DNA of 64,000 bases from positions 124,001 through 188,000 of the IMG/VR virus record IMGVR_UViG_3300033153_007973. One strand, written 5' to 3'. The translations under genes and the position numbers were made by a program. The notes under the pieces were generated by a model. The model was not told the DNA's origin. It searched no databases and worked only from the letters and a program-made list of their open reading frames with translations. Shown in pieces: positions 46,986-60,372 of this stretch; the first letter of the stretch is position 1; each line of letters begins with the position of its first letter.

Positions 46986-47014
46986 TTGACAAGATCTATA
47001 CAAGACTATACGCT
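46986..47014 (+). promoter_or_regulatory. sigma70-type promoter of the glycosyltransferase operon
   Basis: TTGACA (46986-46991), 17 nt, TACGCT (47009-47014); AGGAG RBS before ATG 47045. Confidence 0.65.
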
Positions 47015-47044
47015 GCCATAAAATAGAGAATAGGAGAGCTTTAG

Positions 47045-48178
47045 ATGAAAGTCGAATACCTCAGTGAAGCATTCAAGAACAGTGGGTATGGCGATGCCAG
47101 TCGCCGCAATATCATCCTGCTAAAGAGAGCAGGTTTTGATGTCTCAGTCACACAAATAGATAGTGATGATACCAAGCTATCTGATGACTGGAAGTATCAG
47201 GAATGCAAGCGCCTCAAGAACAAGTTCAATGATCCTGACATAAGAATTTCTCATATCTTAGCCTGTGCTATGGACAAAGTCCATCGCGACGGCGTCAAGA
47301 ATATCTGCTACACTACCTGGGAGACTGATCTTCTCCCAACAGACTGGGTCGCAAAGCTCAACAAGTATGCTGATGAGTGTTGGGTAACTGCGACTCGGAT
47401 TAAGAAGGTCTTCGAAGAATCCGGAGTCAAGATCCCAGTCAAGGTCTTGCCACCTACCCTCTTCCCTGAAGACATCAAATCTGCAGATGAGCCCATCAAT
47501 CAGACAAACCTCGATCCAATCATCAACAACCTCAGACCCAAGAACTTTTGCTTTTATTCAATCTTCCAGTGGATCCCACGAAAGAACCCCGATGCACTGC
47601 TCGAGGCATATGTCAGCGAGTTCGATGCCTCAGAACCAGTTACTCTACTTTTGAAGAGCTACAGAGTAGACCACTCTCCGGCAGAAACAAAGGCAATGAT
47701 ACAGACTATTAATAACCTAACGATAGAAATGGGATGCGGCCGAGAGCTCCTACCAGATATACTTCTGATACATGAACAACTCAGCAATGAATCCATGAAA
47801 GCAATACATAAGCTAGGAGACTGCTTTGTTCTCCCCCACCGCGGTGAGGGCACAGGCCTCCCCATTGTAGATGCTATCATGTTCAACAATCCAGTGATCA
47901 CTACAGCATATGGTGGTCCCGAAGACTTCCTTACTGAATACAATCAGAAGAAGCTCCCATATCGGATGAGACCTGTCAGAAATGCTTTCTGGGCATATAA
48001 TTACTTTAACTGCTACATGAACTGGGCAGATGTAGATGTCATGGACCTCAGAAACTGGATGCGTGATGCATATGAACGTAGAGATAGTCCTGCTATTATT
48101 GCAGAACAGAGGAAGAAGCTACTTGATAGCTATGGACAAGATACGACACTTAAAATGGTAAAGGAGATGTTAACATGA
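47045..48178 (+). CDS. Glycosyltransferase family 4 (GT-B)
   Basis: SGYGDASR, QWIPRKNPDALL and DCFVLPHRGEGTGLPIVDAI...PVITT motifs. Confidence 0.9.
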   Translation: MKVEYLSEAFKNSGYGDASRRNIILLKRAGFDVSVTQIDSDDTKLSDDWKYQECKRLKNKFNDPDIRISHILACAMDKVHRDGVKNICYTTWETDLLPTDWVAKLNKYADECWVTATRIKKVFEESGVKIPVKVLPPTLFPEDIKSADEPINQTNLDPIINNLRPKNFCFYSIFQWIPRKNPDALLEAYVSEFDASEPVTLLLKSYRVDHSPAETKAMIQTINNLTIEMGCGRELLPDILLIHEQLSNESMKAIHKLGDCFVLPHRGEGTGLPIVDAIMFNNPVITTAYGGPEDFLTEYNQKKLPYRMRPVRNAFWAYNYFNCYMNWADVDVMDLRNWMRDAYERRDSPAIIAEQRKKLLDSYGQDTTLKMVKEMLT

Positions 48179-48828
48179 GAGTGGTTCTACCATTTAAGAA
48201 TCGGCCAAACTACTTAAGATTGACTTTATCAACTATTAAGGAAGCTATGCGTAGCCGGACTGATATTAAGCTTCACCTCTTTGATGACATGTCTACGACA
48301 GCATATCCTTTAATTATAGAAGAGATGGACCTCATGATTACCAAAAACAGCACATTAGCAGGACCATATCAAGCCACTTCTAGAGCAATCAATGAAGAGT
48401 TTCTTATATGTGAGGATGAATATCTATTCGCACTAGATGCAGACTGCATTGTCCATCCTAATATCTTTAATATTGTAGAAAATATGGTCAAAGATCTCCC
48501 AAAAATGGGATTTGGTACCCTGTTTAATACTGACACACATAAAGTTAAAGCTGGAAATAGGGACGCAAAAGGATATGTCAGAAAGGTATCTATAGGTGGG
48601 TTAGGTTGCATTATTAAAAGAGATGCTTGGGAGTGGTATCGAAAGCAGACAACACAGAAAGGCCCAAAACATAAAGGATGGGACTGGGACTTCTGTTACT
48701 GGCTCGCAACAACAGATCAGTGGCATATCTGTAGTACAATCAATTCATATGTAGATCACATGGGCCAAACCGGTAGCCACAGTGGGCCTTCATGTGAAAT
48801 CGATCGGGCAATTAGGTTCTTGGAGTAG
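48175..48828 (+). CDS. Glycosyltransferase family 2-like (GT-A)
   Basis: VVLPFKNRPNYL, LFDDMS, DxD motif LDADC, GWDWDF and VDHMG. Confidence 0.85.
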   Translation: MRVVLPFKNRPNYLRLTLSTIKEAMRSRTDIKLHLFDDMSTTAYPLIIEEMDLMITKNSTLAGPYQATSRAINEEFLICEDEYLFALDADCIVHPNIFNIVENMVKDLPKMGFGTLFNTDTHKVKAGNRDAKGYVRKVSIGGLGCIIKRDAWEWYRKQTTQKGPKHKGWDWDFCYWLATTDQWHICSTINSYVDHMGQTGSHSGPSCEIDRAIRFLE

Positions 48829-48831
48829 CTA

Positions 48832-49521
48832 ATGACTAAAGATGTAACAGTAACAATGACAACATGTAAGCGATTACATCTTTTCAAGAAGACTATCGCA
48901 TCATTACTCGAGATGTGCGAAGACCAAGATAGAATAGCTGAATGGATAGTCTCAGATGATCATTCCCCCAAAGAACAAGTTGCAGCAATGAAGAAGCTGT
49001 ATCCATTCATGAATGTCCTTAGTTCTTCAGAGAAAGGACATGCAGCTAATCTGAACAATGTGTTTAAACATGTCAAGACACCATATGTGCTTCACTTAGA
49101 GGATGATTGGCGGTTCATCAAGAAAGGTAAGTTCATAAGCAAAGGAATCCATATCATTAAGAATACCACCAGGATAAAGATAGTCGTATTGAAACCTGGC
49201 ATGGGTGACATACCAAAGATAATCAAGGGCGAATCATGTCTCATACATCTATGGGATAAGGATGAGAATAAGGGAAAGTTTGATTACAAGAAGGCAAAAT
49301 GTAAACAGTTCGGACACTACACATTAAACCCAAGTATACAATCTATGGATGCAGTTAGGAAAACTGGTCGATTCAAGAAGCCACCAAACACCGAGGGACA
49401 ATTCACAGGAACATTTTCAAATCATGGATTTAAACTAGCAACACTACCACACCAATATGTAGAACATATCGGCACTGGAGCAAAGAATAGTGCTTACATT
49501 CTAAATAAGACACGGAGATAA
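48832..49521 (+). CDS. Glycosyltransferase family 2-like (GT-A)
   Basis: TMTTCKRL.LF..TI, SDDHS, LHLEDDW and VEHIG. Confidence 0.85.
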   Translation: MTKDVTVTMTTCKRLHLFKKTIASLLEMCEDQDRIAEWIVSDDHSPKEQVAAMKKLYPFMNVLSSSEKGHAANLNNVFKHVKTPYVLHLEDDWRFIKKGKFISKGIHIIKNTTRIKIVVLKPGMGDIPKIIKGESCLIHLWDKDENKGKFDYKKAKCKQFGHYTLNPSIQSMDAVRKTGRFKKPPNTEGQFTGTFSNHGFKLATLPHQYVEHIGTGAKNSAYILNKTRR

Positions 49522-49523
49522 TC

Positions 49524-50285
49524 ATGGATCAAATACCAATGCGTTGGTGCGCGGGTCTTGCAAATTGGGGAGACATACTCTCACCATATCTAACTTCACT
49601 AATCTCTGGTAAGAAAGCAGTTTTATGTACAGACATAAGTAAGCCAAAGTACTCAGTAATTGGAAGCCAGATGAATCTTGTGGATCGTAATACCATAGTA
49701 TGGGGAAGTGGATTTATGCTCCCAGCTGACAACTTCCAAAAGGGCCCACCTAAGCAAGTTCTAGCAGTCAGGGGACCCATGACCAGGCAGAGACTGCTTC
49801 AGCTCAAGGTTCCTTGTCCAGAAGTATATGGTGATCCCGCCCTTCTGTATCCAAGATACTATCATCCGAAGGTCGAAAAGAAATATGTTTGGGGCATCAT
49901 TCCACACTACGTAGATGTAAAACATCCATGGCTTAAACGATTTGTAGGTAATCCAAAAGTCAAGGTTATTGATATCACACAATCAATAAATGGATTTGTA
50001 GATGATGTGTTGTCATGTGAACGAATCGTCTCAAGTGCACTACATGGAATAATAGCTGGCGACGCGTACGGTCTTCCATCATACTGGATCGAGCTTTCTA
50101 ATAAAGTCTTTGGTCAGGGATTCAAATTCAGAGACTACTTTGCTTCAGTGAGTCGCCCATCAGTCAGACTTACCCCGGATATGGGCAGACTCAAAGACAT
50201 GTCTGTTCATATGAAAGAGTATAAAGTGAACATAGATCTCAATAAACTTATGGATGCGTGTCCATTCAAGTCAAAGGACATATAA
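49524..50285 (+). CDS. Polysaccharide pyruvyltransferase (ExoV-like)
   Basis: NWGDILSP, VWGSG, AVRGPMT, YGDPALL, IIPHY, SSALHGII.GDAYG and FKFRDYF. Confidence 0.9.
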   Translation: MDQIPMRWCAGLANWGDILSPYLTSLISGKKAVLCTDISKPKYSVIGSQMNLVDRNTIVWGSGFMLPADNFQKGPPKQVLAVRGPMTRQRLLQLKVPCPEVYGDPALLYPRYYHPKVEKKYVWGIIPHYVDVKHPWLKRFVGNPKVKVIDITQSINGFVDDVLSCERIVSSALHGIIAGDAYGLPSYWIELSNKVFGQGFKFRDYFASVSRPSVRLTPDMGRLKDMSVHMKEYKVNIDLNKLMDACPFKSKDI

Positions 50286-50286
50286 C

Positions 50287-51573
50287 ATGCATGACATGAT
50301 ACTTATATATTTACCCCATCCATATCTCAATGAGCCCAACGCACAGGCACCCATGGGATTGCTAGCAGTAGGTGCTGTTCTTAAAGAGAACGATTATAAT
50401 ACTGTCGTGAAGAACTACTCCGCGTACTCTATAGATAATGCTATAAAGGATCTTCCAGAGTCTAGGGTCTATGGTATCACCGTGACAAGCCTCGAGCTAC
50501 TTGCAGCTAACAGGTTTGCCAAGAGGATCAAGCAGAAGTATCCTACATGTAACGTGATCCTGGGTGGCCCAGGCACATATGCGGATGAGTTCGTTGATAC
50601 TAATTATATAGACAGTATCTTAAAAGGTGAGGGTGACATAACATGCCTGGAAATGATGCGAGATATGGAGATCAACATCCTTAAACCAGTATACCATGGG
50701 AAACTTGTGACAGATCTAGATACTCTGCCATTTCCTGCTAGAGAGATGCTTGATGGGAATATGGGTGGAAATATCTTCGCATTCAAGAAACAGTACACTA
50801 ACGATGGTAAATCCACAATCCTGCTATCTTCCAGAGGCTGTCCCTTCAAGTGTGCATTCTGTTCTGCGCCTTCTTTCACTCACAACAGTAGGGTTCGACT
50901 CAGAAGTCCAAAGTCAATAGCGGATGAAGTCAAACAAGTCATAGATGAGTATGGTATACGACAGTTTAGGTTTTCTGATGACATGTTTACTGCTAATGCA
51001 AGACATGCTATAGAGGTTAGTAAGGAGCTCCAGAAGCTGGACATCTACTGGCGGGTATCGTGCCGAACCAAGCCACTATCAGAGGACATGCTTAAGGCCA
51101 TGTATGATGGCGGGTGTAAAGAGCTCTCATTTGGTGTAGAAAGTTTCGACGATGATGTCCTAAAGCTATTGGATAAGCGGGCAACATGTGCTGACAATGT
51201 CAGAGCGCTCGAACTCTCTCACAAGCTCAGGTTCACCACTCGAATCTTAATGATGATCAGGACACCTGGGCAAACACCCAAGACAATAGAGGATAACAAA
51301 CACTGGCTAACTAGGGTCCCCTACTCTATCATAGCATGCACCACCTTCGTGCCCATCCCCGGCTCTGATATATGGGACAATCCTGACAAATACAATGTAG
51401 AGATCCTTAACAAGAATCTTGATGACTACAACTTCTACTTCTTTGGACCCGGTGGAGAGAATGAACTAAAGCCCATCCTTAAGATCAAGGATCGTACACT
51501 AGAAGAGTTCCATGCTGAAACAATCGAGTTTCGAGACTGGCTGAAAGAACATACGCAAGTAAATAGAGGATAA
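50287..51573 (+). CDS. Cobalamin-binding radical SAM protein (class B-like)
   Basis: PMGLLAVGA and VILGGPG (B12 domain), SRGCPFKCAFC (CxxxCxxC), FSDDMF and FGVES. Start moved to ATG 50287 after AAGGA. Confidence 0.9.
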   Translation: MHDMILIYLPHPYLNEPNAQAPMGLLAVGAVLKENDYNTVVKNYSAYSIDNAIKDLPESRVYGITVTSLELLAANRFAKRIKQKYPTCNVILGGPGTYADEFVDTNYIDSILKGEGDITCLEMMRDMEINILKPVYHGKLVTDLDTLPFPAREMLDGNMGGNIFAFKKQYTNDGKSTILLSSRGCPFKCAFCSAPSFTHNSRVRLRSPKSIADEVKQVIDEYGIRQFRFSDDMFTANARHAIEVSKELQKLDIYWRVSCRTKPLSEDMLKAMYDGGCKELSFGVESFDDDVLKLLDKRATCADNVRALELSHKLRFTTRILMMIRTPGQTPKTIEDNKHWLTRVPYSIIACTTFVPIPGSDIWDNPDKYNVEILNKNLDDYNFYFFGPGGENELKPILKIKDRTLEEFHAETIEFRDWLKEHTQVNRG

Positions 51574-51577
51574 GATA

Positions 51578-52270
51578 ATGAAAAGCGTACTTGAAGAGAC
51601 ACAGCTAGAAAGAGATGAGGAACTGGGACCACTGATAGATATCCCACTAAGGTATGTGCAGCAGCTAGGCATTTGCACGCCAGATTCTATAAGAATCTAT
51701 GATGGTAGTGCTCCTATCCGTAATGAAGAGGACTATATAGATCTATATAAAGACTTCAAGAGTTTGGATTTTCATGCATACCTCAGGACTCTGATGTTTA
51801 CAAGTGTTGTTCGTAGAGGACACTATTTTAAAGATACCAAACATAAAGATAAAACATGCTTAGATTATGGTAGTGGTGTGGGAACACACACCATAGTCCT
51901 TCTAGAACGTGGTAACTATGTAGACATGATGGACATTAATGGACCTCTATTAAGATTTGCACATAGTCGTGTTCTAAAGCGTGGATATAAGACAAACATA
52001 CTATATTCTGACGCGGTTCTACAGGATGATCACTATGATATTGTCGTGTGTCTAGATGTCTTAGAACATGTATATGATCCCTATTCTGAATTGGTACGAT
52101 TGCACAAAGCTATGAAGAAGAATGCCATATTGATACTAGAAGTTAGTCTCAAGGTGAAAGAATCATCAGGACATTTCAAGAATAGCATTGATGTATGGGA
52201 GAGTAAAGGGTTAGCATTTCTACGTAAGCATTTCACTCGACAGAGCAATACCAGATGGGTGAAATCATGA
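51578..52270 (+). CDS. Class I SAM-dependent methyltransferase
   Basis: CLDYGSGVG, YDIVVCLDVLEHV. Confidence 0.9.
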   Translation: MKSVLEETQLERDEELGPLIDIPLRYVQQLGICTPDSIRIYDGSAPIRNEEDYIDLYKDFKSLDFHAYLRTLMFTSVVRRGHYFKDTKHKDKTCLDYGSGVGTHTIVLLERGNYVDMMDINGPLLRFAHSRVLKRGYKTNILYSDAVLQDDHYDIVVCLDVLEHVYDPYSELVRLHKAMKKNAILILEVSLKVKESSGHFKNSIDVWESKGLAFLRKHFTRQSNTRWVKS

Positions 52271-52767
52271 TAACAGCCAAACTCATCAAGGGTGCGCATT
52301 GTACTATCTCTCCAGAGTCACACATTGGATACAATGAACATGGTGGCGAGATTATTCTGGGCAATGGAACTAAGATCATGCATAACTGTATCATCCGTAC
52401 GTGTACAGGAACCATCCGCATGGGAAAACTTGTCAGTGTAGGATATAATACTATTATGCACGGACAGGGCGGCATCACCATTGGAGATTATGTTCTGATC
52501 AGTCCTGGAGTTCAAATACATGCACAGAACCACGGTATAAAACGCAATACTCTGATAAGAAACCAGCCAAACACACATAAAGGTATCAATATAGCAAATG
52601 ATGTATGGATAGGAGCATCAGCTATTATTACTGATGGAGTAAGCATAGGACAAGGTGCAGTAATCGGCGCCGGCGCTATTGTCACAAAAGATGTTCCTCA
52701 ATATGAAATATGGGCCGGGAATCCCGCCAAGAAGATAGGAGAAAGACATGAAGATACTGTACTTTAG
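52267..52767 (+). CDS. Hexapeptide-repeat O-acetyltransferase
   Basis: ITIGDYVLISPGV, IANDVWIGASAII.DGVSIGQGAVIGAGAIVTKDV, AGNPAK; ATGA overlap with the previous stop. Confidence 0.9.
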   Translation: MITAKLIKGAHCTISPESHIGYNEHGGEIILGNGTKIMHNCIIRTCTGTIRMGKLVSVGYNTIMHGQGGITIGDYVLISPGVQIHAQNHGIKRNTLIRNQPNTHKGINIANDVWIGASAIITDGVSIGQGAVIGAGAIVTKDVPQYEIWAGNPAKKIGERHEDTVL

Positions 52768-53650
52768 CGACCGGTATACATACAACAACTACGGCACAAA
52801 GCGCTCGATATTTGAAGAAGTTAAAAGCAGAGGAATAGATATAATCTGGATAGACACGTCACAAATGAACAAGATACTTCAGCTCATTAAGGAACACTCT
52901 CCAACAATGATATGGCTAGCCAGTTCAGCGCTGTTGCTCAGTCCTGCAGTGAAAGCAAAGATAAAGATACCCATTGTTGGATTTGGTTTCTCGGATCCCT
53001 ATTACTTCAAACCAGATCGGTTTAAGAGTTATGATCTATATGTCACCAACCATATAGGTACCTATGAGAAGTACAAGACTACCATTCCTATGCATTATAA
53101 CCAGACAGCATGTGATTTCAGGTATCATAAGGTAATGGATACACCCAAGAATATAGATGTATCAGTCATCGGACTGGGTACCCATCCATGGTTTCACGAC
53201 AAGCAAACAAGGATCAAATTCGTTAACAAATTACGATCAGAGACATCCTATAGAATACTAGCATTTGGTGCCCAATGGAATTCTCATCCCGAGAACCATG
53301 GATTTATTACTGGAGAGAAGTTTCTGCGCATTATCGGTAAGAGCCAGATAGGACTGGATGTGCAAGACGACTGGAGCCCACTGGCGCACCGCATGTTCGA
53401 GTATGCAGCATGTGGGGTACCTGTTATCACCAGAGCACGACCAGAAATTGCTATGGTGTTCAATGACAAGGAAATTATTACATATACCACATACAGCGAC
53501 ATCTTGTCCAAGTTAAACCACTATATGAAACATCCAGAGCAGCTAGCAGAGATTGGCAAGAGGGCACACGAACGATGTAAGAGACAACACAATATCAATT
53601 TCAGGGTGGACGGGATACTACAGTTTGTCAAGAAACACGAAGGAGACTAG
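52748..53650 (+). CDS. CgeB-like glycosyltransferase (GT-B)
   Basis: DVSVIG, SQIGLDV...HRMFEYAACG.PVIT, IGKRAHER...H....RV. Confidence 0.85.
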   Translation: MKILYFSDRYTYNNYGTKRSIFEEVKSRGIDIIWIDTSQMNKILQLIKEHSPTMIWLASSALLLSPAVKAKIKIPIVGFGFSDPYYFKPDRFKSYDLYVTNHIGTYEKYKTTIPMHYNQTACDFRYHKVMDTPKNIDVSVIGLGTHPWFHDKQTRIKFVNKLRSETSYRILAFGAQWNSHPENHGFITGEKFLRIIGKSQIGLDVQDDWSPLAHRMFEYAACGVPVITRARPEIAMVFNDKEIITYTTYSDILSKLNHYMKHPEQLAEIGKRAHERCKRQHNINFRVDGILQFVKKHEGD

Positions 53651-54205
53651 GTGCATATCCCTGAAGTATCTAAAGTAATCCATAATGCTGTCGCTTCATA
53701 TGTCAAGAAATATGATCCTTCTACTGTGTTGGATATTGGAGGATTCAGAAGACTGCAACAGTTTCTGACAGCCAAAGTAACTGATGCTAATATCAATAAT
53801 GGAATCGATGGCACGAACCTCCCATATAAAGATAACAGCTTCGATGTCACGACATCGATTGCTACGTTAGAACATGTGAACAACCAAGCGAAATTCATGT
53901 CGGAATCAATCAGAACAGCAAGGATTGCTTCCGTACACTGGTTCCCATTTGGACCTGATGGTCAACGGATAGAAGATCTTCTTAAAGGATATAATCATAA
54001 ACATGACTGTGTCGTTCCAAGTCTATCTATCTTCCTGGATCTCTTCAATCGATATGATTTCAGTGTCCATATGTATCCTAAATACAAAGACCACCTCAAG
54101 AATATGGCACACATAAAACCACAGATTATGAATAGCGATACTATGAGGTTCATTGAGAGATTTAGTTCGAGATCATATGGAATCATACTGGAGATAATCA
54201 AATGA
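53651..54205 (+). CDS. Type 11-like SAM-dependent methyltransferase
   Basis: VLDIGG, DGTNLPYKDNSFDV, ATLEHV. Confidence 0.75.
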   Translation: MHIPEVSKVIHNAVASYVKKYDPSTVLDIGGFRRLQQFLTAKVTDANINNGIDGTNLPYKDNSFDVTTSIATLEHVNNQAKFMSESIRTARIASVHWFPFGPDGQRIEDLLKGYNHKHDCVVPSLSIFLDLFNRYDFSVHMYPKYKDHLKNMAHIKPQIMNSDTMRFIERFSSRSYGIILEIIK

Positions 54206-54930
54206 AGATAAAGCTCTCCGGATATATGATCAGTTATAATGAGAAACCCATTATAAAGTTATCCATCATGAACTTACTACAGTTCGTTGATGAGTTAATC
54301 ATTACCGATGGAGAGAGTACCGACGGCACAGCAGAGCTTCTAGATAGAATGGCTAATAGATTTAGTAAGATCAAACTATATCCAATGCGACAGAGATATG
54401 GCAGAAAGAGAACTGTATCTGGTCGTGAAAGAACTGCCGATGGCTTTAATGAAATGGAACGTAGAACATATGCTATATCTAAGTGTTCGGGCACGCATAT
54501 ATTAATGAAAGATGTAGATGAATTGTATCACGAACACACGGATTTCCACAATCTGATAGAGAAGAATCCTGCATTTCTATCCTTTAGTCAGCTACAATAT
54601 GAAGTAGTGCCAGGAAATAAGTTCTTGCCTCATATACGAATCAATGGCCATCATAGTGTACCAAGACTTATTAAAAACACTCCAGATATAGTCTTCAAAG
54701 ATATACGTAACCTGAATGGAATTGATTGTTGTCTCTTTAGTAACAAGTATAACAAACGACTGGCAGATATCAAGGACATGGTTGGTGCATATAGTATGTG
54801 GCACTACAAAATGATGTTTGATAAGAAACAGCTATACAAGCACTACAAGAGCAAGGATCGGGCAACAAAGCCATTGTTAACATTTCCATCAGAACATAAT
54901 AAATTCATTGACATGGGCAGCTTAACGTGA
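54202..54930 (+). CDS. Glycosyltransferase family 2-like
   Basis: ISYNEK, VDELIITDGESTDGT, DxD motif KDVDE, MWHY. Confidence 0.85.
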   Translation: MKIKLSGYMISYNEKPIIKLSIMNLLQFVDELIITDGESTDGTAELLDRMANRFSKIKLYPMRQRYGRKRTVSGRERTADGFNEMERRTYAISKCSGTHILMKDVDELYHEHTDFHNLIEKNPAFLSFSQLQYEVVPGNKFLPHIRINGHHSVPRLIKNTPDIVFKDIRNLNGIDCCLFSNKYNKRLADIKDMVGAYSMWHYKMMFDKKQLYKHYKSKDRATKPLLTFPSEHNKFIDMGSLT

Positions 54931-55061
54931 TATTAGGGATAGTCATTGCATTCTGTGTTGGGCTGCTCGCTGGATGGGTACTGAGATTCTTTTGGATCAG
55001 GTGGCACTACAACAACTGTCGATTTGCACCTATAAGAAGTCTATTTGGAACAGAAGATTAA
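54927..55061 (+). CDS. Small single-pass membrane protein (not in ORF track)
   Basis: The GTG overlaps the upstream TGA (GTGA). Translates MILGIVIAFCVGLLAGWVLRFFWIRWHYNNCRFAPIRSLFGTED; its TAA overlaps the next RBS. Confidence 0.6.
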   Translation: MILGIVIAFCVGLLAGWVLRFFWIRWHYNNCRFAPIRSLFGTED

Positions 55062-55072
55062 AGGAGAATAAT

Positions 55073-55864
55073 ATGAAGATTGTTGCATGCTGGATTTGTT
55101 ACAACAACATTGTGACACTGCCCTACAGTATAGATGCTGTCTATGACCTAATAGATGAGCTAGTCATAGTAGATGGATCCTTTAAAGGAAAGAGGAGCAC
55201 TGATGGTACCTGGGAGTATCTACAGAAACTGAAGGCATCTTCCAAGAAGCCACTGCACATAGTGGCTTCTCAGATGGGGTCTCTCTTCAATAAGCACAAT
55301 GAACATGTGGATGTAACTGGTAACCATGACTCCAACTTATGGACATGGCAGATAGACTCGGATGAGATATATTCTGAGGCTAATGCGAAGGCAGTCAGTG
55401 AAGCTATTCGATCTGATAAATACAATGGCATCATTGTAAAGCTAATGAACATCGAACGATTTATAGATGGAAAGTTCTTCATAGCAAACAATCTTGATAG
55501 GATAGACACCAACCAAATGCGTGTATATCGCATGCATAAAGGTTTGAACTTCAAGACAAAAGACTCGATCTTTGAATGGATAGTATACGAGGATGGATCC
55601 GAGGTACAACGTGGTAACAATAAGATACATGCAAATAGTAAGACTCTAAGAGTGGACCACTATCACTGCCTCGCTACCGTGGAACAGGCGATTGCACGAT
55701 ATAACCACTATGGGAGCAATGATCCAGTTGGAACAGAAGCTAGGATCAGAAGCCCAGGAAACAGCACCGAAGAGATCAAAATGCATGCTCTTGCAACCAA
55801 ATGGTTGCCCGATACCATGACAAATAAAGAATACTATAAGGCTCTCAAGCCTTTCAAAGGATAA
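55073..55864 (+). CDS. Glycosyltransferase family 2-like
   Basis: IVACWICYNN, IDELVIVDGSF...STDGT, WQIDSDE. Start moved to ATG 55073 after AAGGAG. Confidence 0.85.
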   Translation: MKIVACWICYNNIVTLPYSIDAVYDLIDELVIVDGSFKGKRSTDGTWEYLQKLKASSKKPLHIVASQMGSLFNKHNEHVDVTGNHDSNLWTWQIDSDEIYSEANAKAVSEAIRSDKYNGIIVKLMNIERFIDGKFFIANNLDRIDTNQMRVYRMHKGLNFKTKDSIFEWIVYEDGSEVQRGNNKIHANSKTLRVDHYHCLATVEQAIARYNHYGSNDPVGTEARIRSPGNSTEEIKMHALATKWLPDTMTNKEYYKALKPFKG

Positions 55865-55867
55865 GCA

Positions 55868-56167
55868 ATGAAGAATACACTAGTGCCGTATTGGACTAAC
55901 GTAGACATGCAGGAACCTCACATAGCATTTGTGAGTAATTGGGAGCCATTTCCTACAGATGATATTGAGATCATCAACCAAAAACGTAAAGAAAATCCTG
56001 GGACGCCCATTTTGATCCTTATTAGGGACACTCGGATCAGAAAGGAAAATGTGCTTAAGAGAGCCGAGCCGATCATACAATGGATGAAGGATAAGGACAT
56101 CAAGGGATCAGTTATGATCATACCAGATGTCTGTGAGGTCCATGACTTAGATGAGGAGAGTATATGA
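55868..56167 (+). CDS. Degenerate cytidylyltransferase-like small protein
   Basis: AFVSNWEPF...ILILIRDT...IIPDV echoes the phage HxGH nucleotidyltransferase pattern (GRWQPxHxGH...IRD...IPD), but HxGH is absent. Confidence 0.4.
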   Translation: MKNTLVPYWTNVDMQEPHIAFVSNWEPFPTDDIEIINQKRKENPGTPILILIRDTRIRKENVLKRAEPIIQWMKDKDIKGSVMIIPDVCEVHDLDEESI

Positions 56168-57126
56168 TGAATCTGCACCTAGTTCCAACTCTTAAGAAGA
56201 AGTGCGGAATAGCCGAGTTTGCCAAAGGACTGAACTCTTATCTTAACATGGAGATAAATGATTCAGTCATTATTTCTCCAGATGTTATCTTACTAGAACA
56301 TGAGTACGCATATGATGGTGATTGTTGGGAACAAATAGAAGTGCTGCGTCCTAAAACCTTTATTTACATGCACTCTGTAAATCTTACCAATCCGAACAAC
56401 CAGATCACTCACAGAAAGATCAACGAGTTATGTGAGGGTGTGTTTGTCTCCACTGAGATCATGAAATCAAAACTCGCTCAGGTTATTACTATTCCTATCT
56501 ATGTAATACAGCACTACTCTGAACCTATCACAGACTCTCCAGACGAGACAAAAGCAGAGAACATTTTCACTATTGGGATGCATGGCTTTGCTGTCCCCAG
56601 AACATGTCTTATCAGAGGCATCATGGAGCTGGGATATAATCTAGATATGCATCTTCATATCGTAAGCACTATTAATGACGTAACTCTGAAACACTTCCAG
56701 ATCTCTAAATCATATCTGGATAGGTGCAGGAGTGTTTGCCGGCGTCAGGGTTTCGAAGATAGAGTTACATTCGATTTTAATTATTACAAAGACAAATCCG
56801 ACATCATTAAAGCACTGAACAAGAAGTGTGACATGATCCTTCTCGTTCAGGCTGATGGTGGTGATACGTACAATGCAAGCGGCACTGCCCGCGTTGCATT
56901 AGCAAGCGGGCGGCCTGTTGTGGTGCCAAGCTATCCTCAATTTGATGGTCTTCCAGAAGGTGTTGTCTATCGTATGAAGGACAACTATAGAGACAGCATC
57001 AGAGAGGTCATAGAAGACCCTCAGAAGGTAATTAACTCAATTGACATACGAAAGGTTATAGAGTATACTGAAGAGACCAGCCCGGCCAACACCGCGGCAA
57101 AGATCAAGGAAATCATGGGGATATAA
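56164..57126 (+). CDS. Glycosyltransferase family 4-like (GT-B)
   Basis: KCGIAEF, LEHEY, IGMHGF, NASGTARVALASGRPVVV; paralogous to the second domain of 60095..62836. Confidence 0.8.
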   Translation: MMNLHLVPTLKKKCGIAEFAKGLNSYLNMEINDSVIISPDVILLEHEYAYDGDCWEQIEVLRPKTFIYMHSVNLTNPNNQITHRKINELCEGVFVSTEIMKSKLAQVITIPIYVIQHYSEPITDSPDETKAENIFTIGMHGFAVPRTCLIRGIMELGYNLDMHLHIVSTINDVTLKHFQISKSYLDRCRSVCRRQGFEDRVTFDFNYYKDKSDIIKALNKKCDMILLVQADGGDTYNASGTARVALASGRPVVVPSYPQFDGLPEGVVYRMKDNYRDSIREVIEDPQKVINSIDIRKVIEYTEETSPANTAAKIKEIMGI

Positions 57127-59072
57127 TGGCAATATCAACAATACGGGACTCATATCATCATCTCTTTAGTATCAAATCACTAAATCCTCGTAATGGAATA
57201 TATCTGAATGGCTCTCTATTCGGCATACCAACTTGGGCAAACTCTGAAATCGATCCAGGAGTGGTGAATGCTGAATATAGAAAACTGAAACCGAAGTCTG
57301 CTTCAGAAGCAGGAGAAACCACAGATAAAAACTCAACCGCGGGCAACTGGGTGCTAACAAACCTAGATAAACTAACTGGTACAGAAGCAGACAAATACGA
57401 TTGGGTATTTAAGTATGCAACACTAGCTCTATTTAAGAACCACTTTCATTCTGAGAACCCGGATAATTTTAGTATGTCGGTTGGTGGTGGAAGCTCCATT
57501 GGTTCTGAACGGGAAATTCCAGACTGGAGATTTATTAAAGCATTCTTTGCTACCAGATCGTTACTAGATATGACGAAAGCATCTCGCGTTCCCTCAATCT
57601 CTACTATAAGTTCTAGATTTGGTATTTGTCAGCTCAGTTTCGATGATTTCTTTAATGGCCTTAGTATTTTAATTGATAGATATAACAAAAGGTTCTTTTC
57701 TGAAAATAGTAATAGTAGATTTGCACCTTATCTATATAGGCCAGGAGATAGCAGAAGACTAACCCTCGGAATAACAGGTAATCCTCTATTGTTCGAGATC
57801 AAAGGATTTGTTGCAAGAGCAATTGATTCTCAGAGTCCGCATTTATCATTTGGCCCACAATTCACTTATGGAGATTCAACATATCAATCAGCTAGAGAAC
57901 ATCTAATAAAGAGTCAGGTTACACGATGGGAAGACATATATAACAATGCAGTGAGTGATAGTACTACTTCGGATCCACCAGGACTAGGATTAGATAAGAA
58001 TGATTCAAACGAGAAAGAAGAAGCTATAGCTATAGCAAATGAAGCAAGCACACCAACAGTTGCAAATGCGTTTCTGGAGAAAGTTATACTTACTCAGCTT
58101 TCACAATTTGATCAAATCATGATTTCAGTAGCAGCACTAAAATATTACTATACGAAGTGCAACTCAGGAAATAATGATTTAAAAATGGTTCAAGCAATGG
58201 CAGCAATGACTGCGCCAGATCGCGTTGATATGTTTAGAAATTGTCTCAATGTAAACTCTATCAATGAATTTCTGCAAGCTCTTAATATATTTGATTCGCA
58301 TGTATTCGTATCAGCTGATCGTATACCAGGTAAGACAGTTGATTTCGGAGTAAGTGGTAGTAGCCGCAAACATATATTTAGTAGTGAACATTTCACTAAG
58401 AATAATCACCAACTCCATCTACGATTTGCTAAAGCAAACGAAGATGTATCTATTCTAGAGAATGATGTATCCACAAGATACGGATCAAGTGGTAATGCAA
58501 TTCTACAAAAGACAGGAGATAGACCCACAGTTCCTACTGTTCCTTCATTAAGTGAAGCCGATGATGGCGTTGAAACGCCTCATCGACGGCTCTATAAGAT
58601 TGATGATGAATACTATTATCTAGATGAGAAATTCCGAGAGTGTCTTGAGACATTACTTAAGACCATTACTCTCACAGATTATTACTCACAACATAAGAGG
58701 TCAACAACAAATCCAGCAGCAGCTGGTGTCACAATAGAAATAGGACAAAGAGGACACACACCAAGTGTCATGAATGTAACAGGTGTAACAGCTTTGCATA
58801 CATTCATGACAGAAGCTGAAGGTAACGGCCCTAACCAACCCTTAACTCGACAGCAGGTACAAACCGCTGTAGCCGGTGCAGCTGCTACTATAACAGGAGT
58901 AGCTGTTGATACAGTAACGGATGCACCAAAAGCAATAGCTAATACAACAAGAGAGACAATTCATGTTGAAAGTAAAGGAAGAAATTGGTTTCGTGTTTGG
59001 TGGTTTAACTGGTTTGGCAATCTAATATTTAAATCTAATGTGAGTTCAAAACCGAGAATCCGATGCGTCTAA
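57126..59072 (+). CDS. Large hypothetical protein, possible degenerate lytic transglycosylase-like fold
   Basis: 648-aa ORF. PDWRFIKAFFATRS...FGICQL...QIMISVAALKYY...AMAAM resembles SLT motifs but lacks the catalytic Glu. Confidence 0.45.
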   Translation: MAISTIRDSYHHLFSIKSLNPRNGIYLNGSLFGIPTWANSEIDPGVVNAEYRKLKPKSASEAGETTDKNSTAGNWVLTNLDKLTGTEADKYDWVFKYATLALFKNHFHSENPDNFSMSVGGGSSIGSEREIPDWRFIKAFFATRSLLDMTKASRVPSISTISSRFGICQLSFDDFFNGLSILIDRYNKRFFSENSNSRFAPYLYRPGDSRRLTLGITGNPLLFEIKGFVARAIDSQSPHLSFGPQFTYGDSTYQSAREHLIKSQVTRWEDIYNNAVSDSTTSDPPGLGLDKNDSNEKEEAIAIANEASTPTVANAFLEKVILTQLSQFDQIMISVAALKYYYTKCNSGNNDLKMVQAMAAMTAPDRVDMFRNCLNVNSINEFLQALNIFDSHVFVSADRIPGKTVDFGVSGSSRKHIFSSEHFTKNNHQLHLRFAKANEDVSILENDVSTRYGSSGNAILQKTGDRPTVPTVPSLSEADDGVETPHRRLYKIDDEYYYLDEKFRECLETLLKTITLTDYYSQHKRSTTNPAAAGVTIEIGQRGHTPSVMNVTGVTALHTFMTEAEGNGPNQPLTRQQVQTAVAGAAATITGVAVDTVTDAPKAIANTTRETIHVESKGRNWFRVWWFNWFGNLIFKSNVSSKPRIRCV

Positions 59073-59856
59073 GTCCTGCAGCATCTAAGTCCTTATATCC
59101 TAATAGCTTTCCGAATCCCACATAGCCAGAGTCTTTAACATTTCCAACATCCTTAAGATAATAATACATATTCTGGATGGTACTATTTGGCGCCTGTTCC
59201 ATAGAAACAAGGCGCTTAATAAGATCTAATCTGGTTAGTGCTTTCTTCTTATTATCTATATAATCATCGTTAAGCTCTATAACAGGATGAATAGATGAGC
59301 GAAGGTGTCTCTTATATGTCTTATGTATCTTAAGTAATGCTTTTGATGTATACAAAGGAAGCATCCTGAGGAAGTAAGGAAGATACTCTGTATATATTTT
59401 TGTTTTGTTAACTGGTCGAAAGCGTTGAGGCATAACATAGAATGAATCATACCAAAGATCTGACCACAAGGTATCCCACCCATAGATACTTAAGGGCTTA
59501 TGGAACATCTGTCGGAAGGCATCTTGTGCTGCGATGATAGGATAAGTCTTTGTACAGAGTCGCACCACCGTCCAGCATAGCTTCTCATGACGATGGATAT
59601 ACTCATGAAACCCACACCTCTTCGCGATACTACTACTTAGAACAAGATACCTACTCGACTTAAGGAAGTCGAGTAGGTACATGATCGCTGGTGCTACGTG
59701 GTTAATGTCTACTGTGTACGTAAGACTACGATTTCTTGTCTGGTGCCGGATCGTTATATTTCCGTTGGAACCAGTCTGGTACGACTTCTTTGCCATTCTC
59801 TCTATGCCACCTCCAGTTCTTGCCCTTCCAGAACTGTTCGAAAAGTCCAGCCGCAT
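59035..59856 (-). CDS. Hypothetical basic protein (start uncertain; ATGs at 59796 and 59682 are alternatives)
   Basis: Long ORF in the minus-strand operon; its 3' end overlaps the convergent gene by 38 nt. Confidence 0.55.
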   Translation of the reverse strand: MRLDFSNSSGRARTGGGIERMAKKSYQTGSNGNITIRHQTRNRSLTYTVDINHVAPAIMYLLDFLKSSRYLVLSSSIAKRCGFHEYIHRHEKLCWTVVRLCTKTYPIIAAQDAFRQMFHKPLSIYGWDTLWSDLWYDSFYVMPQRFRPVNKTKIYTEYLPYFLRMLPLYTSKALLKIHKTYKRHLRSSIHPVIELNDDYIDNKKKALTRLDLIKRLVSMEQAPNSTIQNMYYYLKDVGNVKDSGYVGFGKLLGYKDLDAAGLRRIGFSVLNSH

Positions 59857-60082
59857 TAAAGAATGCGCTGACCTTCTTCCAGGTTTCTTCGTCTTGTATC
59901 TCTCGGAAGACCCCTGTAAACTTTTCCCTACTTGGCGAGAGTGATACTTCTTCTACGAAGTTCTTCTGACTATTGATGTCGACCATAGCCACATAATAGA
60001 TGCTGGAATCGATTGCCATCCCAATACTATATAGTGACTTAGACTTTGGAATCTTTTTCACATCTGTATTGATCAGTTTCAT
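59726..60082 (-). CDS. Hypothetical protein
   Basis: 118-aa ORF starting immediately after the stop of 60085..60372. Confidence 0.6.
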   Translation of the reverse strand: MKLINTDVKKIPKSKSLYSIGMAIDSSIYYVAMVDINSQKNFVEEVSLSPSREKFTGVFREIQDEETWKKVSAFFNAAGLFEQFWKGKNWRWHRENGKEVVPDWFQRKYNDPAPDKKS

Positions 60083-60084
60083 TG

Positions 60085-60372
60085 TTATTTAGCTTTATCT
60101 CCCTGGCTGTCTAGGAGGCTGCTCCCCTCCACCATAGGCACGCTGACGTCTCCTTTCATGATTATTGTTGTTACCAGCTGTCTGCTGATGAGCACTGTTG
60201 CCATGAATCCCATTGCTGAGTCGCTCGGATCTGGGATTTTGGTCTCCACTACCATGTCCTTCGCATCGAAGTCCAGGAGTTTCCCCTCCATTCCTGCTGC
60301 TCTCCCGCCCATCATTGGAAGTTCCAGCGATACTATCTTGCCCTTGAATCTTTCCATTACATCGTTGCTCAT
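60085..60372 (-). CDS. Sm/LSm (Hfq-like) fold small protein
   Basis: AGGAGG RBS then ATG 60372. MERFKGKIVSLEL...GMEGKLLDFDAKDMVV...TVLISRQLVTTI fits Sm1/Sm2 spacing. Confidence 0.5.
   Translation of the reverse strand: MSNDVMERFKGKIVSLELPMMGGRAAGMEGKLLDFDAKDMVVETKIPDPSDSAMGFMATVLISRQLVTTIIMKGDVSVPMVEGSSLLDSQGDKAK

What the first reader, a model, noticed from the sequence alone, without database searches (positions are those of the whole stretch)
46986..57126. Self-contained glycan assembly and decoration operon abutting the tail fibres
It has its own sigma70 promoter, then a tightly packed series: GT4, GT2, GT2, pyruvyltransferase, B12 radical SAM, MTase, O-acetyltransferase, CgeB-like GT, MTase, GT2, small TM protein, GT2, dead NTase-like protein, GT4. 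No nucleotide-sugar synthases, undecaprenyl-phosphate initiating transferase or Wzx/Wzy appear in the window, and the GTs have no obvious TM helices. The acceptor is therefore probably cytoplasmic (virion protein or DNA) and the sugars host-derived. This complexity resembles giant-virus fibril glycosylation more than typical phage GTs.
Basis: partly seen in the sequence, partly recalled or inferred. Interest (0 to 1): 0.75.

Follow-up and report, generated by a model that had tools for sequence, protein, structure and literature searches.

The report
Jumbo phage glycan-building gene island
A complete 234-kb uncultured phage carries, just after its tail-fibre genes, an island of nine sugar-adding enzyme domains and five sugar-decorating enzymes, but no genes to make activated sugars or move glycans across a membrane, so it builds an elaborate glycan inside the cell on a target that is still unknown.

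Summary
A sigma70-like site lies at 46986. The island is larger than reported: an orphan 648-aa gene (to 59072) and a convergent 913-aa double glycosyltransferase (60095-62836) belong to it. The genome is a complete 234-kb phage. It has no sugar-nucleotide enzymes, no initiating transferase, no polytopic membrane protein and no hydroxymethyl-pyrimidine, TET or DNA-glycosyltransferase genes.

The central six genes form a cassette: pyruvyltransferase, B12 radical SAM, two methyltransferases, acetyltransferase and a CgeB-like transferase. It recurs at 35-60% identity in other large phages and in bacterial envelope-polysaccharide loci. The radical SAM family also sits in thymidine-hypermodification clusters and in head-gene modules of small phages, always beside a glycosyltransferase.

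Glycan assembly from host sugars is well supported. The acceptor is not resolved: virion protein about 0.4, host lipid-linked envelope glycan about 0.3, DNA under 0.1. This is a new variant of the known phage glycan islands.

The parts
46986..47014 (+). sigma70-like promoter candidate, TTGACA-17 nt-TACGCT, 30 nt before the first ATG
   Evidence: Read from the sequence. It belongs to a TTGAC[AG]-N16-18-TAnnnT class with 16 of 32 genome matches in intergenic DNA. The -10 is weak and the stock scan does not list it.
47045..48178 (+). GT-B glycosyltransferase, GT1/GT4 type (GT4a), 377 aa
   Evidence: PF00534 3.9e-8 and PF13692 2.9e-6. No TM.
48175..48828 (+). GT2 glycosyltransferase (GT2a), 217 aa
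   Evidence: PF00535 5e-8. DAD at residues 88-90.
48832..49521 (+). GT2 glycosyltransferase (GT2b), 229 aa
   Evidence: PF00535 9.4e-9.
49524..50285 (+). short polysaccharide pyruvyltransferase-family protein (PyrT), 253 aa; part of the conserved cassette
   Evidence: PF04230 8.1e-12. ESM Atlas structural match TM 0.93 to short PS_pyruv_trans clusters that are 56-59% viral. Homologues at 34-45% identity in 7 other loci.
50254..51573 (+). cobalamin-type radical SAM enzyme (rSAM), 439 aa; cassette core
   Evidence: PF04055 1.6e-23; PF02310 24.4 bits, below the cut-off. Invariant C196/C200/C203. No NCBIfam equivalog. More than 120 homologues at 53-64% identity.
51578..52270 (+). class I SAM methyltransferase (MT23), 230 aa; cassette
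   Evidence: PF13489 8.8e-12. Cassette homologues at 31-51% identity.
52255..52767 (+). hexapeptide-repeat acyl/acetyltransferase (AcT), 170 aa; cassette
   Evidence: PF00132 1.3e-12. Sugar O-acetyltransferase-like NCBIfam hits, all below cut-off. Homologues at 47-61% identity.
52748..53650 (+). CgeB-like GT-B glycosyltransferase (Glyco_trans_1_2), 300 aa; cassette
   Evidence: PF13524 6.7e-25. Homologues at 45-56% identity.
53651..54205 (+). small SAM methyltransferase (MT11), 184 aa; cassette
   Evidence: PF08241 2.9e-7. Homologues at 35-50% identity in 7 other loci.
54202..54930 (+). GT2 glycosyltransferase (GT2c), 242 aa
   Evidence: PF00535 1.6e-8 and PF13704 1.3e-7.
54927..55061 (+). 44-aa ORF with one N-terminal transmembrane-like helix; the GTG start overlaps the preceding TGA stop
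   Evidence: KD17 2.6. It exactly fills the gap before the next gene. No homologue was tested, so coding status is inferred.
55073..55864 (+). probable GT2-like glycosyltransferase (GT2d), 263 aa from the ATG with a strong RBS
   Evidence: PF00535 0.0023, below cut-off. Six-frame hit 2e-4. The N-terminus is paralogous to GT2c (BLASTP 2.5e-5). RBS.
55868..56167 (+). 99-aa protein of unknown function, small Rossmann-like alpha/beta fold
   Evidence: No Pfam hit. AF2 pLDDT 65. No significant PDB fold match.
56164..57126 (+). GT-B fold glycosyltransferase of a rare family (o320), 320 aa
   Evidence: 45 homologues among 1.8 billion representatives. AF2 pLDDT 92. Foldseek matches to SenB, chlorovirus NY2A GT, SdgB, HepE and TarM at E 1e-12 to 1e-10. 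A 70%-identical homologue lies next to another B12 rSAM.
57126..59072 (+). orphan 648-aa protein, last gene of the operon; candidate acceptor or structural protein (speculative)
   Evidence: No Pfam, PHROG or PDB hit. ESM Atlas model pLDDT 0.29. No homologue among 5.8 billion proteins.
59647..59680 (.). perfect 14-bp hairpin between the convergent gene blocks; likely terminator
   Evidence: z -3.97.
60095..62836 (-). 913-aa protein with two GT-B glycosyltransferase halves and a disordered C-terminal tail
   Evidence: PF00534/PF13692 at residues 305-357. PHROG glycosyltransferase 9e-25. Residues 458-742 match the o320 family (hhalign 97.4%).

Best explanation
The island is a phage-encoded factory that builds and decorates a complex glycan on the cytoplasmic side of the infected cell, using the host's sugar nucleotides, SAM, acetyl-CoA, PEP and cobalamin. 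Nine glycosyltransferase domains (three to four GT2 and five GT-B) lay down the chain. A conserved six-gene cassette adds one CgeB-like transfer step and tailors a sugar by pyruvylation, O/N-methylation, acetylation and a cobalamin-radical-SAM step. That last step is most likely C-methylation, but a ring or deoxy rearrangement is not excluded. Shown here: the gene content; the operon structure; the absence of sugar-nucleotide, initiation, flipping, polymerisation and DNA-hydroxymethylation genes from a complete genome; and the recurrence of the cassette. Inferred: the acceptor. I think it is most likely one or more of the phage's own virion proteins (tail fibres, a capsid decoration protein, or the orphan 648-aa product). 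They would be glycosylated as they are made, giving the particle a glycan coat, as in mycobacteriophages, chloroviruses and Mimivirus.
For: The operon is tight and has its own promoter-like site. It closes the ~108-kb + strand block that holds the baseplate, virion and tail-fibre genes. The genome is complete, with direct terminal repeats and a 100% CheckV estimate. It lacks Epimerase, NTP_transferase, CTP_transf_3 and Bac_transf, and it has no polytopic membrane protein. The phage therefore supplies only transfer and tailoring steps, which is all that protein glycosylation needs. No integrase was seen in the Pfam lists, and the genome has 31 tRNAs and its own RNA polymerase pieces, which points to a lytic jumbo phage. 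In complete 42-kb phages the same rSAM, with a methyltransferase and a GT2, sits between the portal/MuF and scaffold/capsid genes. Those genomes also have no hydroxymethyl-pyrimidine route. The closest folds to the 320-aa GT include the protein O-glycosyltransferases SdgB and GtfA and a chlorovirus GT. Precedents are Mimivirus fibril glycans with pyruvate ketals and O-methyl sugars (PMC8456856) and mycobacteriophage virion glycosylation (as cited in PMC12619734).
Against: No glycosylated protein or acceptor motif was identified, and no Ser/Thr-rich tracts were found. Bacterial copies of the cassette lie in envelope-polysaccharide or LPS-type loci. A small TM peptide lies inside the operon. The sigma70-like promoter class is used on both strand blocks, so it does not tie the island to late expression. 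A position next to tailspike genes is also where seroconverting phages keep their O-antigen modification genes (my own knowledge). Foldseek does not separate protein-acting GT-B enzymes from others. No expression or particle data could be obtained.
Confidence: 0.4

Rival explanations
1. Host surface remodelling. The soluble transferases act at the inner face of the membrane on the host's own undecaprenyl- or lipid A-core-linked intermediates. The host's flippase, ABC exporter and ligase then display the altered, decorated glycan. This changes the receptor that the phage's beta-helix tailspike recognises, giving superinfection exclusion or stopping progeny from sticking to debris.
For: The six-gene cassette occurs at 35-58% identity in bacterial loci that also hold GT9 heptosyltransferase-family genes, an MsbA/PglK-like ABC protein, NeuB plus a CMP-transferase, DegT, epimerase and GtrA-fused GT2 genes. 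Transferases of such pathways normally lack TM helices. The island holds a 44-aa TM peptide. A 1714-aa beta-helix protein and LamG/NHL fibres lie just upstream, which suggests a polysaccharide receptor. Large cyanomyoviruses carry comparable islands that their authors read as host cell-wall modification (PMC12801897).
Against: The genome has no initiating transferase, flippase, polymerase, ligase, GtrA/B/C or acyltransferase_3-type protein. Nine transferase domains would build almost a whole new unit, which host Wzx/Wzy enzymes may not accept. The phage looks lytic, and the island sits in the structural block rather than among early genes. The host is unknown.
Confidence: 0.3
2. DNA hypermodification. 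The transferases build a decorated glycan on the phage's own DNA bases to block restriction and CRISPR.
For: Homologues of the same rSAM (39-54% identity) lie directly between a TET-associated-type DNA glycosyltransferase and a 5-hmdU DNA kinase. A thymidylate-synthase-like gene and DNA polymerase A lie next door in complete 54-62-kb phages. The rSAM tree does not separate these copies from the cassette copies. Phage DNA glycan clusters use GT-A and GT-B enzymes related to LPS and teichoic-acid enzymes (bioRxiv 10.1101/2023.12.21.572611).
Against: Six-frame searches of this complete genome find no thymidylate-synthase-like hydroxymethylase, 5-hmdU kinase, TET/JBP, C5 methylase, TAGT or RGP. 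No known acceptor hydroxyl would therefore exist on its DNA. The TET search had no positive control. Nine transferase domains far exceed the one to three sugars known on DNA. The bacterial copies of the cassette cannot be acting on DNA.
Confidence: 0.07
3. Another acceptor. The island could make a free or secreted polysaccharide, a glycolipid, or a glycosylated small molecule or peptide during infection, for example a matrix or decoy material or a cytoplasmic methylated polysaccharide.
For: No acceptor could be identified. The nearest NCBIfam matches of the rSAM are lipid- and natural-product-modifying enzymes (HpnJ, HpnR, ladderane-type, P-methyltransferases), and MT11 weakly resembles the mycofactocin oligosaccharide methyltransferase. 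All of these are far below their cut-offs.
Against: There is no export function, lipid-synthesis gene or peptide-precursor gene in the island or genome. No precedent in phages is known to me.
Confidence: 0.13

Closest known systems
Mycobacteriophage virion glycosylation (Freeman et al. 2023, as cited in PMC12619734 and PMC12801897)
   Same: Phage-encoded soluble glycosyltransferases, with methyltransferases, use host sugar nucleotides. There are no membrane steps.
   Different: Those phages carry two to four genes, not about 16. They have no radical SAM, pyruvyltransferase or acetyltransferase. Capsid and tail-tube acceptors were shown there by experiment; nothing is shown here.
Giant-virus glycosylation machinery (Mimivirus fibrils, PMC8456856; chlorovirus capsid glycans)
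   Same: A virus-encoded multi-enzyme set builds bacterial-like glycans bearing pyruvate ketals and O-methyl groups. Multi-domain soluble transferases are used. A chlorovirus GT is among the closest folds to the 320-aa protein.
   Different: Giant viruses also encode the sugar-nucleotide pathways (Rha, viosamine, GlcNAc). This phage encodes none. The host is a bacterium, not a eukaryote.
Cell-wall/LPS gene islands of large cyanomyoviruses (P-SSM2, S-SCSM1, S-SCSM2R; PMC12801897)
   Same: A large lytic myovirus-like genome with many clustered glycosyltransferases whose target is unknown.
   Different: Those islands include NDP-sugar epimerases, KdsA/B and RmlC. No B12 rSAM / pyruvyltransferase / CgeB-like cassette is reported for them.
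Seroconversion cassettes of temperate phages (GtrABC, Oac, Wzy-type; from my own knowledge)
   Same: They sit next to tailspike genes and modify a surface glycan that is the phage receptor.
   Different: They depend on polytopic membrane proteins and usually on lysogeny. This genome has neither (no integrase).
Phage DNA sugar and thymidine hypermodification clusters (bioRxiv 10.1101/2023.12.21.572611; PMC8989533)
   Same: The rSAM family of this island occurs inside such clusters in other phages, and the transferase folds are shared.
   Different: The genes that define those pathways are absent here. The radical SAM described in PMC8989533 (M6 gp53) is spore-photoproduct-lyase-like, not the cobalamin type.
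Bacterial envelope-polysaccharide loci carrying the same six-gene cassette (Pirellulaceae, Phycisphaerae and Deltaproteobacteria MAGs)
   Same: They hold the same cassette genes (rSAM, MT11, MT23, AcT, CgeB-like GT, PyrT) in near-identical order, at 35-58% identity.
   Different: In bacteria the cassette sits among sugar-nucleotide, GT9, ABC-exporter and membrane-linked genes. In the phage it is surrounded only by further soluble transferases.

Membership tests
Phage virion-protein glycosylation system | Phage-encoded soluble glycosyltransferases that need no lipid carrier or export genes | tested here: met
   Nine GT domains, none with TM segments. No PGT or polytopic membrane protein in the genome.
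Phage virion-protein glycosylation system | Glycan covalently attached to capsid, tail or fibre proteins | not testable with these tools
   This needs particles or co-expression plus MS. No sequencing run could be listed for expression data either.
Phage virion-protein glycosylation system | A recognisable acceptor region in structural proteins | tested here: inconclusive
   No Ser/Thr-rich low-complexity tracts in any ORF. The orphan 648-aa protein is moderately Ser/Thr-rich and poorly ordered.
Seroconversion / O-antigen modification cassette | Polytopic membrane component (GtrA flippase, GtrC, Wzy, Oac acyltransferase_3) | tested here: not met
   No ORF in the genome has more than three hydrophobic 19-mers, and those with three are tiny or spurious.
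Seroconversion / O-antigen modification cassette | Temperate lifestyle (integrase, repressor) | tested here: inconclusive
   No integrase family appears in the Pfam lists of the non-window ORFs, but one list was cut at 25 of 48 families and the structural block outside the window was not scanned.
Phage DNA sugar / thymidine hypermodification cluster | An enzyme that makes 5-hydroxymethyl pyrimidine (thymidylate-synthase-like hydroxymethylase, or C5 methylase plus TET) | tested here: not met
   PF00303, PF00145 and PF12851 give no hit in six frames. The TET search had no positive control.
Phage DNA sugar / thymidine hypermodification cluster | 5-hmdU DNA kinase or a dedicated DNA glycosyltransferase (TAGT) | tested here: not met
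   PF18723 and PF20691 are absent from G000 but present in four other rSAM-bearing records in the same searches.
Giant-virus-type autonomous glycosylation machinery | Virus-encoded transferases plus glycan-tailoring enzymes (methyl, pyruvyl) | tested here: met
Giant-virus-type autonomous glycosylation machinery | Virus-encoded sugar-nucleotide biosynthesis | tested here: not met
   No Epimerase, NTP_transferase or CTP_transf_3. Nothing of the kind appears in the Pfam lists.
Class B (cobalamin-dependent) radical SAM enzymes | CxxxCxxC cluster motif in a radical SAM core | tested here: met
   PF04055 1.6e-23. C196, C200 and C203 are invariant in 16 homologues.
Class B (cobalamin-dependent) radical SAM enzymes | N-terminal cobalamin-binding domain | tested here: inconclusive
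   PF02310 scores 24.4 bits, below the 32.1-bit cut-off. Nearly all homologues carry a precomputed PF02310 hit.
Class B (cobalamin-dependent) radical SAM enzymes | Assignment to a characterised subfamily (HpnJ, HpnR, BchE, GenK-like, P-methyltransferases) | tested here: not met
   The best NCBIfam score is 107 bits against an equivalog cut-off of 578 bits.
Polysaccharide pyruvyltransferase family (PF04230) | Family-level sequence and fold match | tested here: met
   46.1 bits against a 25.3-bit cut-off, covering the C-terminal half of the profile. ESM Atlas TM 0.93 to PF04230 clusters. Catalytic activity was not tested.

The most novel reading that the evidence does not exclude
A bacteriophage coats its own particle with a complex glycan that is pyruvylated, acetylated and multiply methylated (including by a radical mechanism). 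The glycan would be built wholly in the cytoplasm by about nine phage transferase domains. That would make it a bacterial-virus counterpart of giant-virus fibril glycosylation. Phages would also move the same portable tailoring cassette, centred on an uncharacterised cobalamin radical SAM enzyme, between virion glycans, DNA glycans and bacterial envelope glycans.
Probability: 0.3. Interest if true: 0.8.

Novelty: new variant of a known kind. Interest (0 to 1): 0.6.

Why it matters
Large phages often carry blocks of glycosyltransferases, and none of those blocks has an experimentally known target. This island is a clean test case. The genome is complete, and it encodes only transfer and tailoring steps. 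At its centre is a six-gene cassette shared with other big phages and with bacterial surface-glycan loci.

The cassette's cobalamin radical SAM enzyme belongs to no characterised subfamily. It turns up next to a glycosyltransferase in four settings: jumbo-phage islands, bacterial envelope loci, thymidine-hypermodification clusters and head-gene modules. Working out its reaction would annotate hundreds of metagenomic genes at once. It could also reveal a new sugar modification on virions, on DNA or on cell envelopes.

If the acceptor is the virion, phage particles can carry far more elaborate glycan coats than is now known. That would affect how phages are recognised by hosts, grazers and immune systems.

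Tried and rejected
1. Close relatives. Megablast and tblastn against 50,697 phage records found nothing near. A tail-fibre query in IMG/VR found only the same phage. Synteny with sister phages could therefore not be used.

2. Expression or environment. Two run searches listed nothing.

3. Host. ClpP's best named hits are Spirochaetota and Clostridia MAGs at 64-69% identity, which is too conserved to decide. The cassette's Planctomycetota homologues have 59% GC against the phage's 42%. The host stays unknown. The anaerobic RNR and the B12 rSAM suggest an anaerobe.

4. Splitting the rSAM family by context. The tree is star-like and the contexts intermix, so the acceptor cannot be read from phylogeny.

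5. Remote homology between the unknown rSAM neighbours in other phages and the window's genes. Only one methyltransferase family, two GT-B families and one GT2-like family linked up.

6. The isoelectric points of the transferases gave no DNA-binding signal.

7. The 99-aa and 648-aa proteins could not be identified.

8. A 20-aa listing showed that it does.

9. The 273-aa minus-strand ORF at 59035-59856 is probably not a gene. It has no hits and it spans the terminator hairpin.

10. CAZy/dbCAN typing was not available. TM prediction was by hydropathy only.

Full report
WHAT IS THERE

The window is bases 124001-188000 of a 234,008-bp virus record with direct terminal repeats, judged 100% complete. 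GC is 42%. The genome has 31 tRNA genes, pieces of a multisubunit RNA polymerase, an anaerobic ribonucleotide reductase, PolB, RecA, ClpP, RtcB and RNA ligases. It is a lytic-looking jumbo phage. Among 50,697 phage records nothing is close to it.

Window bases 1-47,000 belong to a ~108-kb + strand block of baseplate, virion and tail-fibre genes. The last of these are a 1714-aa beta-helix protein, a LamG/NHL propeller protein and a DUF4376 protein.

THE OBSERVATION

- Twelve are supported by Pfam or by fold.
- The 320-aa last gene has no Pfam hit. It models with pLDDT 92 as a GT-B glycosyltransferase, and its best solved matches are SenB, a chlorovirus GT, SdgB, HepE and TarM.
- The 'small TM protein' is a 44-aa ORF (54927-55061). 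Its GTG start overlaps the previous stop, and it has one strongly hydrophobic helix.
- The GT2 that follows probably starts at 55073, behind a strong ribosome-binding site.
- The 99-aa 'dead NTase-like' gene gives only a generic Rossmann-like model, so that label cannot be judged.

At 46986 the sequence reads TTGACA, 17 nt, TACGCT. The stock promoter scan found no excess of promoter-like sites and did not list this one. A relaxed form of the pattern, however, has 16 of its 32 genome matches in the ~7% of DNA that is intergenic, upstream of operons on both strands. The site is therefore a believable member of the phage's promoter class, with a weak -10 element.

The operon does not stop at 57126. 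An orphan 648-aa gene overlaps the stop of the last transferase and ends at 59072. A perfect 14-bp hairpin follows at 59647-59680. The convergent 913-aa gene at 60095-62836 holds two GT-B halves.

The full count is nine transferase domains and five tailoring enzymes. A second IMG/VR record carries the same arrangement.

WHAT IS ABSENT

Six-frame searches of the whole genome found none of these: NAD-dependent epimerase/dehydratase, sugar-phosphate nucleotidyltransferase, CMP-sugar synthetase or Bac_transf initiating transferase. All GT2 and GT1 hits fall inside the island.

No ORF in the genome has more than three hydrophobic segments. This rules out Wzx, Wzy, WaaL, WecA-type, GtrA/C and acyltransferase_3-type proteins.

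Also absent are the thymidylate-synthase family, 5-hmdU DNA kinase, TET/JBP, C5 DNA methylase, TET-associated glycosyltransferase and RGP. The TET search had no positive control.

A CONSERVED CASSETTE

The radical SAM protein has more than 120 metagenomic homologues at 53-64% identity. Pattern scans returned 28 viral loci, the window's own phage among them, and 5 cellular loci. After duplicates were removed, 28 loci in all were compared.

In 13 of those 28, the radical SAM gene lies with homologues of the window's MT23, acetyltransferase or CgeB-like genes. In 8 each, it lies with the pyruvyltransferase-like gene or with the small methyltransferase.

The carriers include:

- large phage contigs of 87-277 kb with 29-35% GC (L024, L032, L033, L042), where further GT4-, GT-D- and GT9-like genes flank the cassette;
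- bacterial contigs with 50-59% GC, from Pirellulaceae, Phycisphaerae and Deltaproteobacteria MAGs and an 874-kb contig.

In the bacteria the cassette lies among GT9 genes, an MsbA/PglK-like ABC protein, NeuB with a CMP-transferase, DegT, epimerase, carbamoyl- and sulfotransferases and a GtrA-fused GT2. Those are envelope-polysaccharide loci.

Short pyruvyltransferase-family proteins of this type form ESM Atlas clusters that are more than half viral. No cluster protein reaches an NCBIfam equivalog cut-off.

THE SAME RADICAL SAM FAMILY IN OTHER SETTINGS

In complete 54-62-kb phages (L034, L036), in L044 and in a 7-kb 'archaeal MAG' contig (L018), the homologue lies beside a 5-hmdU DNA kinase and a thymidylate-synthase-like gene. 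L034, L044 and L018 also carry a TET-associated-type glycosyltransferase. In L034 the order is TAGT-like glycosyltransferase, rSAM, kinase, with DNA polymerase A a few genes on. These are thymidine-hypermodification clusters.

In three contigs (L038-L040) the record also holds an RGP/GT75-like gene close by.

In a complete 42-kb phage (L026) and its relatives, the homologue lies with a methyltransferase and a GT2 between the portal/MuF genes and a DUF2213 scaffold-like gene.

In a 107-kb phage-like contig (L055) it is part of another glycan island, with DegT, formyltransferase, sulfotransferase and GT2/GT4 genes.

The protein tree is star-like and the contexts intermix.

The simplest reading is that this enzyme tailors a sugar whatever the sugar is attached to, and that it is exchanged freely. 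The radical SAM enzyme already described for thymidine hypermodification is of a different type, spore-photoproduct-lyase-like (PMC8989533).

WHAT THE ISLAND DOES

Well supported (about 0.85): the island assembles and decorates a glycan on the cytoplasmic side from host-made precursors.

The acceptor is inferred, not shown.

For virion proteins:
- the phage supplies only transfer and tailoring steps;
- the island closes the structural gene block;
- the phage looks lytic;
- the small-phage head-module context exists, in genomes that also lack any hydroxymethyl-pyrimidine route;
- precedents exist in mycobacteriophages and giant viruses (PMC12619734, PMC8456856).

For host envelope glycans:
- the bacterial cassette contexts;
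- soluble transferases are normal in lipid-linked pathways;
- the TM peptide;
- the tailspike neighbourhood;
- the usual reading of cyanophage islands (PMC12801897).

For DNA there is only the family's presence in hypermodification clusters elsewhere. This genome lacks every known way to make an acceptor base.

My estimates are virion protein 0.4, host envelope 0.3, another acceptor 0.13 and DNA 0.07.

'Host-derived sugars' follows from the data. 'Therefore cytoplasmic acceptor' does not follow from the lack of TM helices. 'DNA' is unlikely in this genome.

NOVELTY

Glycosyltransferase islands in large phages are known as annotations. The following appear to be undescribed in the papers I could search:

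- an island with no sugar-nucleotide genes at all;
- the portable six-gene cassette;
- the multi-context cobalamin radical SAM family.

I rate this a new variant of a known kind, with interest 0.6.

Noticed in passing
L034:9082-15766; also L036, L044, L018: A cobalamin-type radical SAM gene sits between a TET-associated-type glycosyltransferase and a 5-hmdU DNA kinase, with a thymidylate-synthase-like gene and PolA beside them, in complete 54-62-kb phages. The thymidine-hypermodification paper I read (PMC8989533) describes no such enzyme; its radical SAM is SPL-like.
   Followed up: partly
L026:5378-13916; similar in L028, L029, L045: In ~42-kb phages the order is terminase, portal, MuF-like, an unknown 327-aa gene, the B12 radical SAM, a methyltransferase, a GT2, then a DUF2213 scaffold-like gene. 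This is a small glycan-tailoring set inside the head-assembly module.
   Followed up: partly
L018 (DQIQ01000064.1, 'Thermoplasmata' MAG) and L019 (CAZGNE010000043.1, 'Bathyarchaeia' MAG): These 7-kb contigs binned as archaeal carry phage-type content (5-hmdU kinase, TS-like, TAGT-like genes in L018). They are probably viral contigs that were mis-binned.
   Followed up: no
window 59035-60094: About 1 kb lies between the convergent blocks. It holds a perfect 14-bp hairpin (59647-59680) and only a dubious 273-aa minus-strand ORF with no homologues. No Rfam family matches it.
   Followed up: partly
whole genome, e.g. window 7890, 34019, 46986: Near-consensus sigma70-type promoters (TTGACA-17-TATAAT) precede operons on both strand blocks of a phage that also encodes RNA polymerase subunit fragments. 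Half of all matches lie in the 7% of DNA that is intergenic.
   Followed up: partly
window 60095-60370 (C-terminal ~90 residues of the 913-aa protein): The double glycosyltransferase ends in a long low-complexity tail rich in Gly, Asn, Gln and Arg, of unknown role.
   Followed up: no
window 114-7871 and upstream (genome 120484-131871): An ORF of 3795 aa spans the start of the window. ORFs of 2570 and 2274 aa lie just upstream. These are very large virion-block proteins without annotation.
   Followed up: no
genome 188-234 kb (L008-L010): The replication block holds an intein splicing domain (8.5e-11), an anaerobic ribonucleotide reductase with its activase, and a VWA/AAA pair. Elsewhere the genome encodes NAD synthase, NADAR, Fic and RtcB.
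   Followed up: no
L054:4344-5108: A GIY-YIG/NUMOD homing-endonuclease gene lies directly upstream of the radical SAM homologue in a 93-kb phage contig. This may be one route by which the gene moves between genomes.
   Followed up: no
L024 / G003 (277-kb phage), 201684-202010; also G011: A weak thymidylate-synthase-like hit lies 10-20 kb from the cassette in another cassette-bearing jumbo phage. Whether it is a plain ThyA or a hydroxymethylase was not resolved.
   Followed up: no
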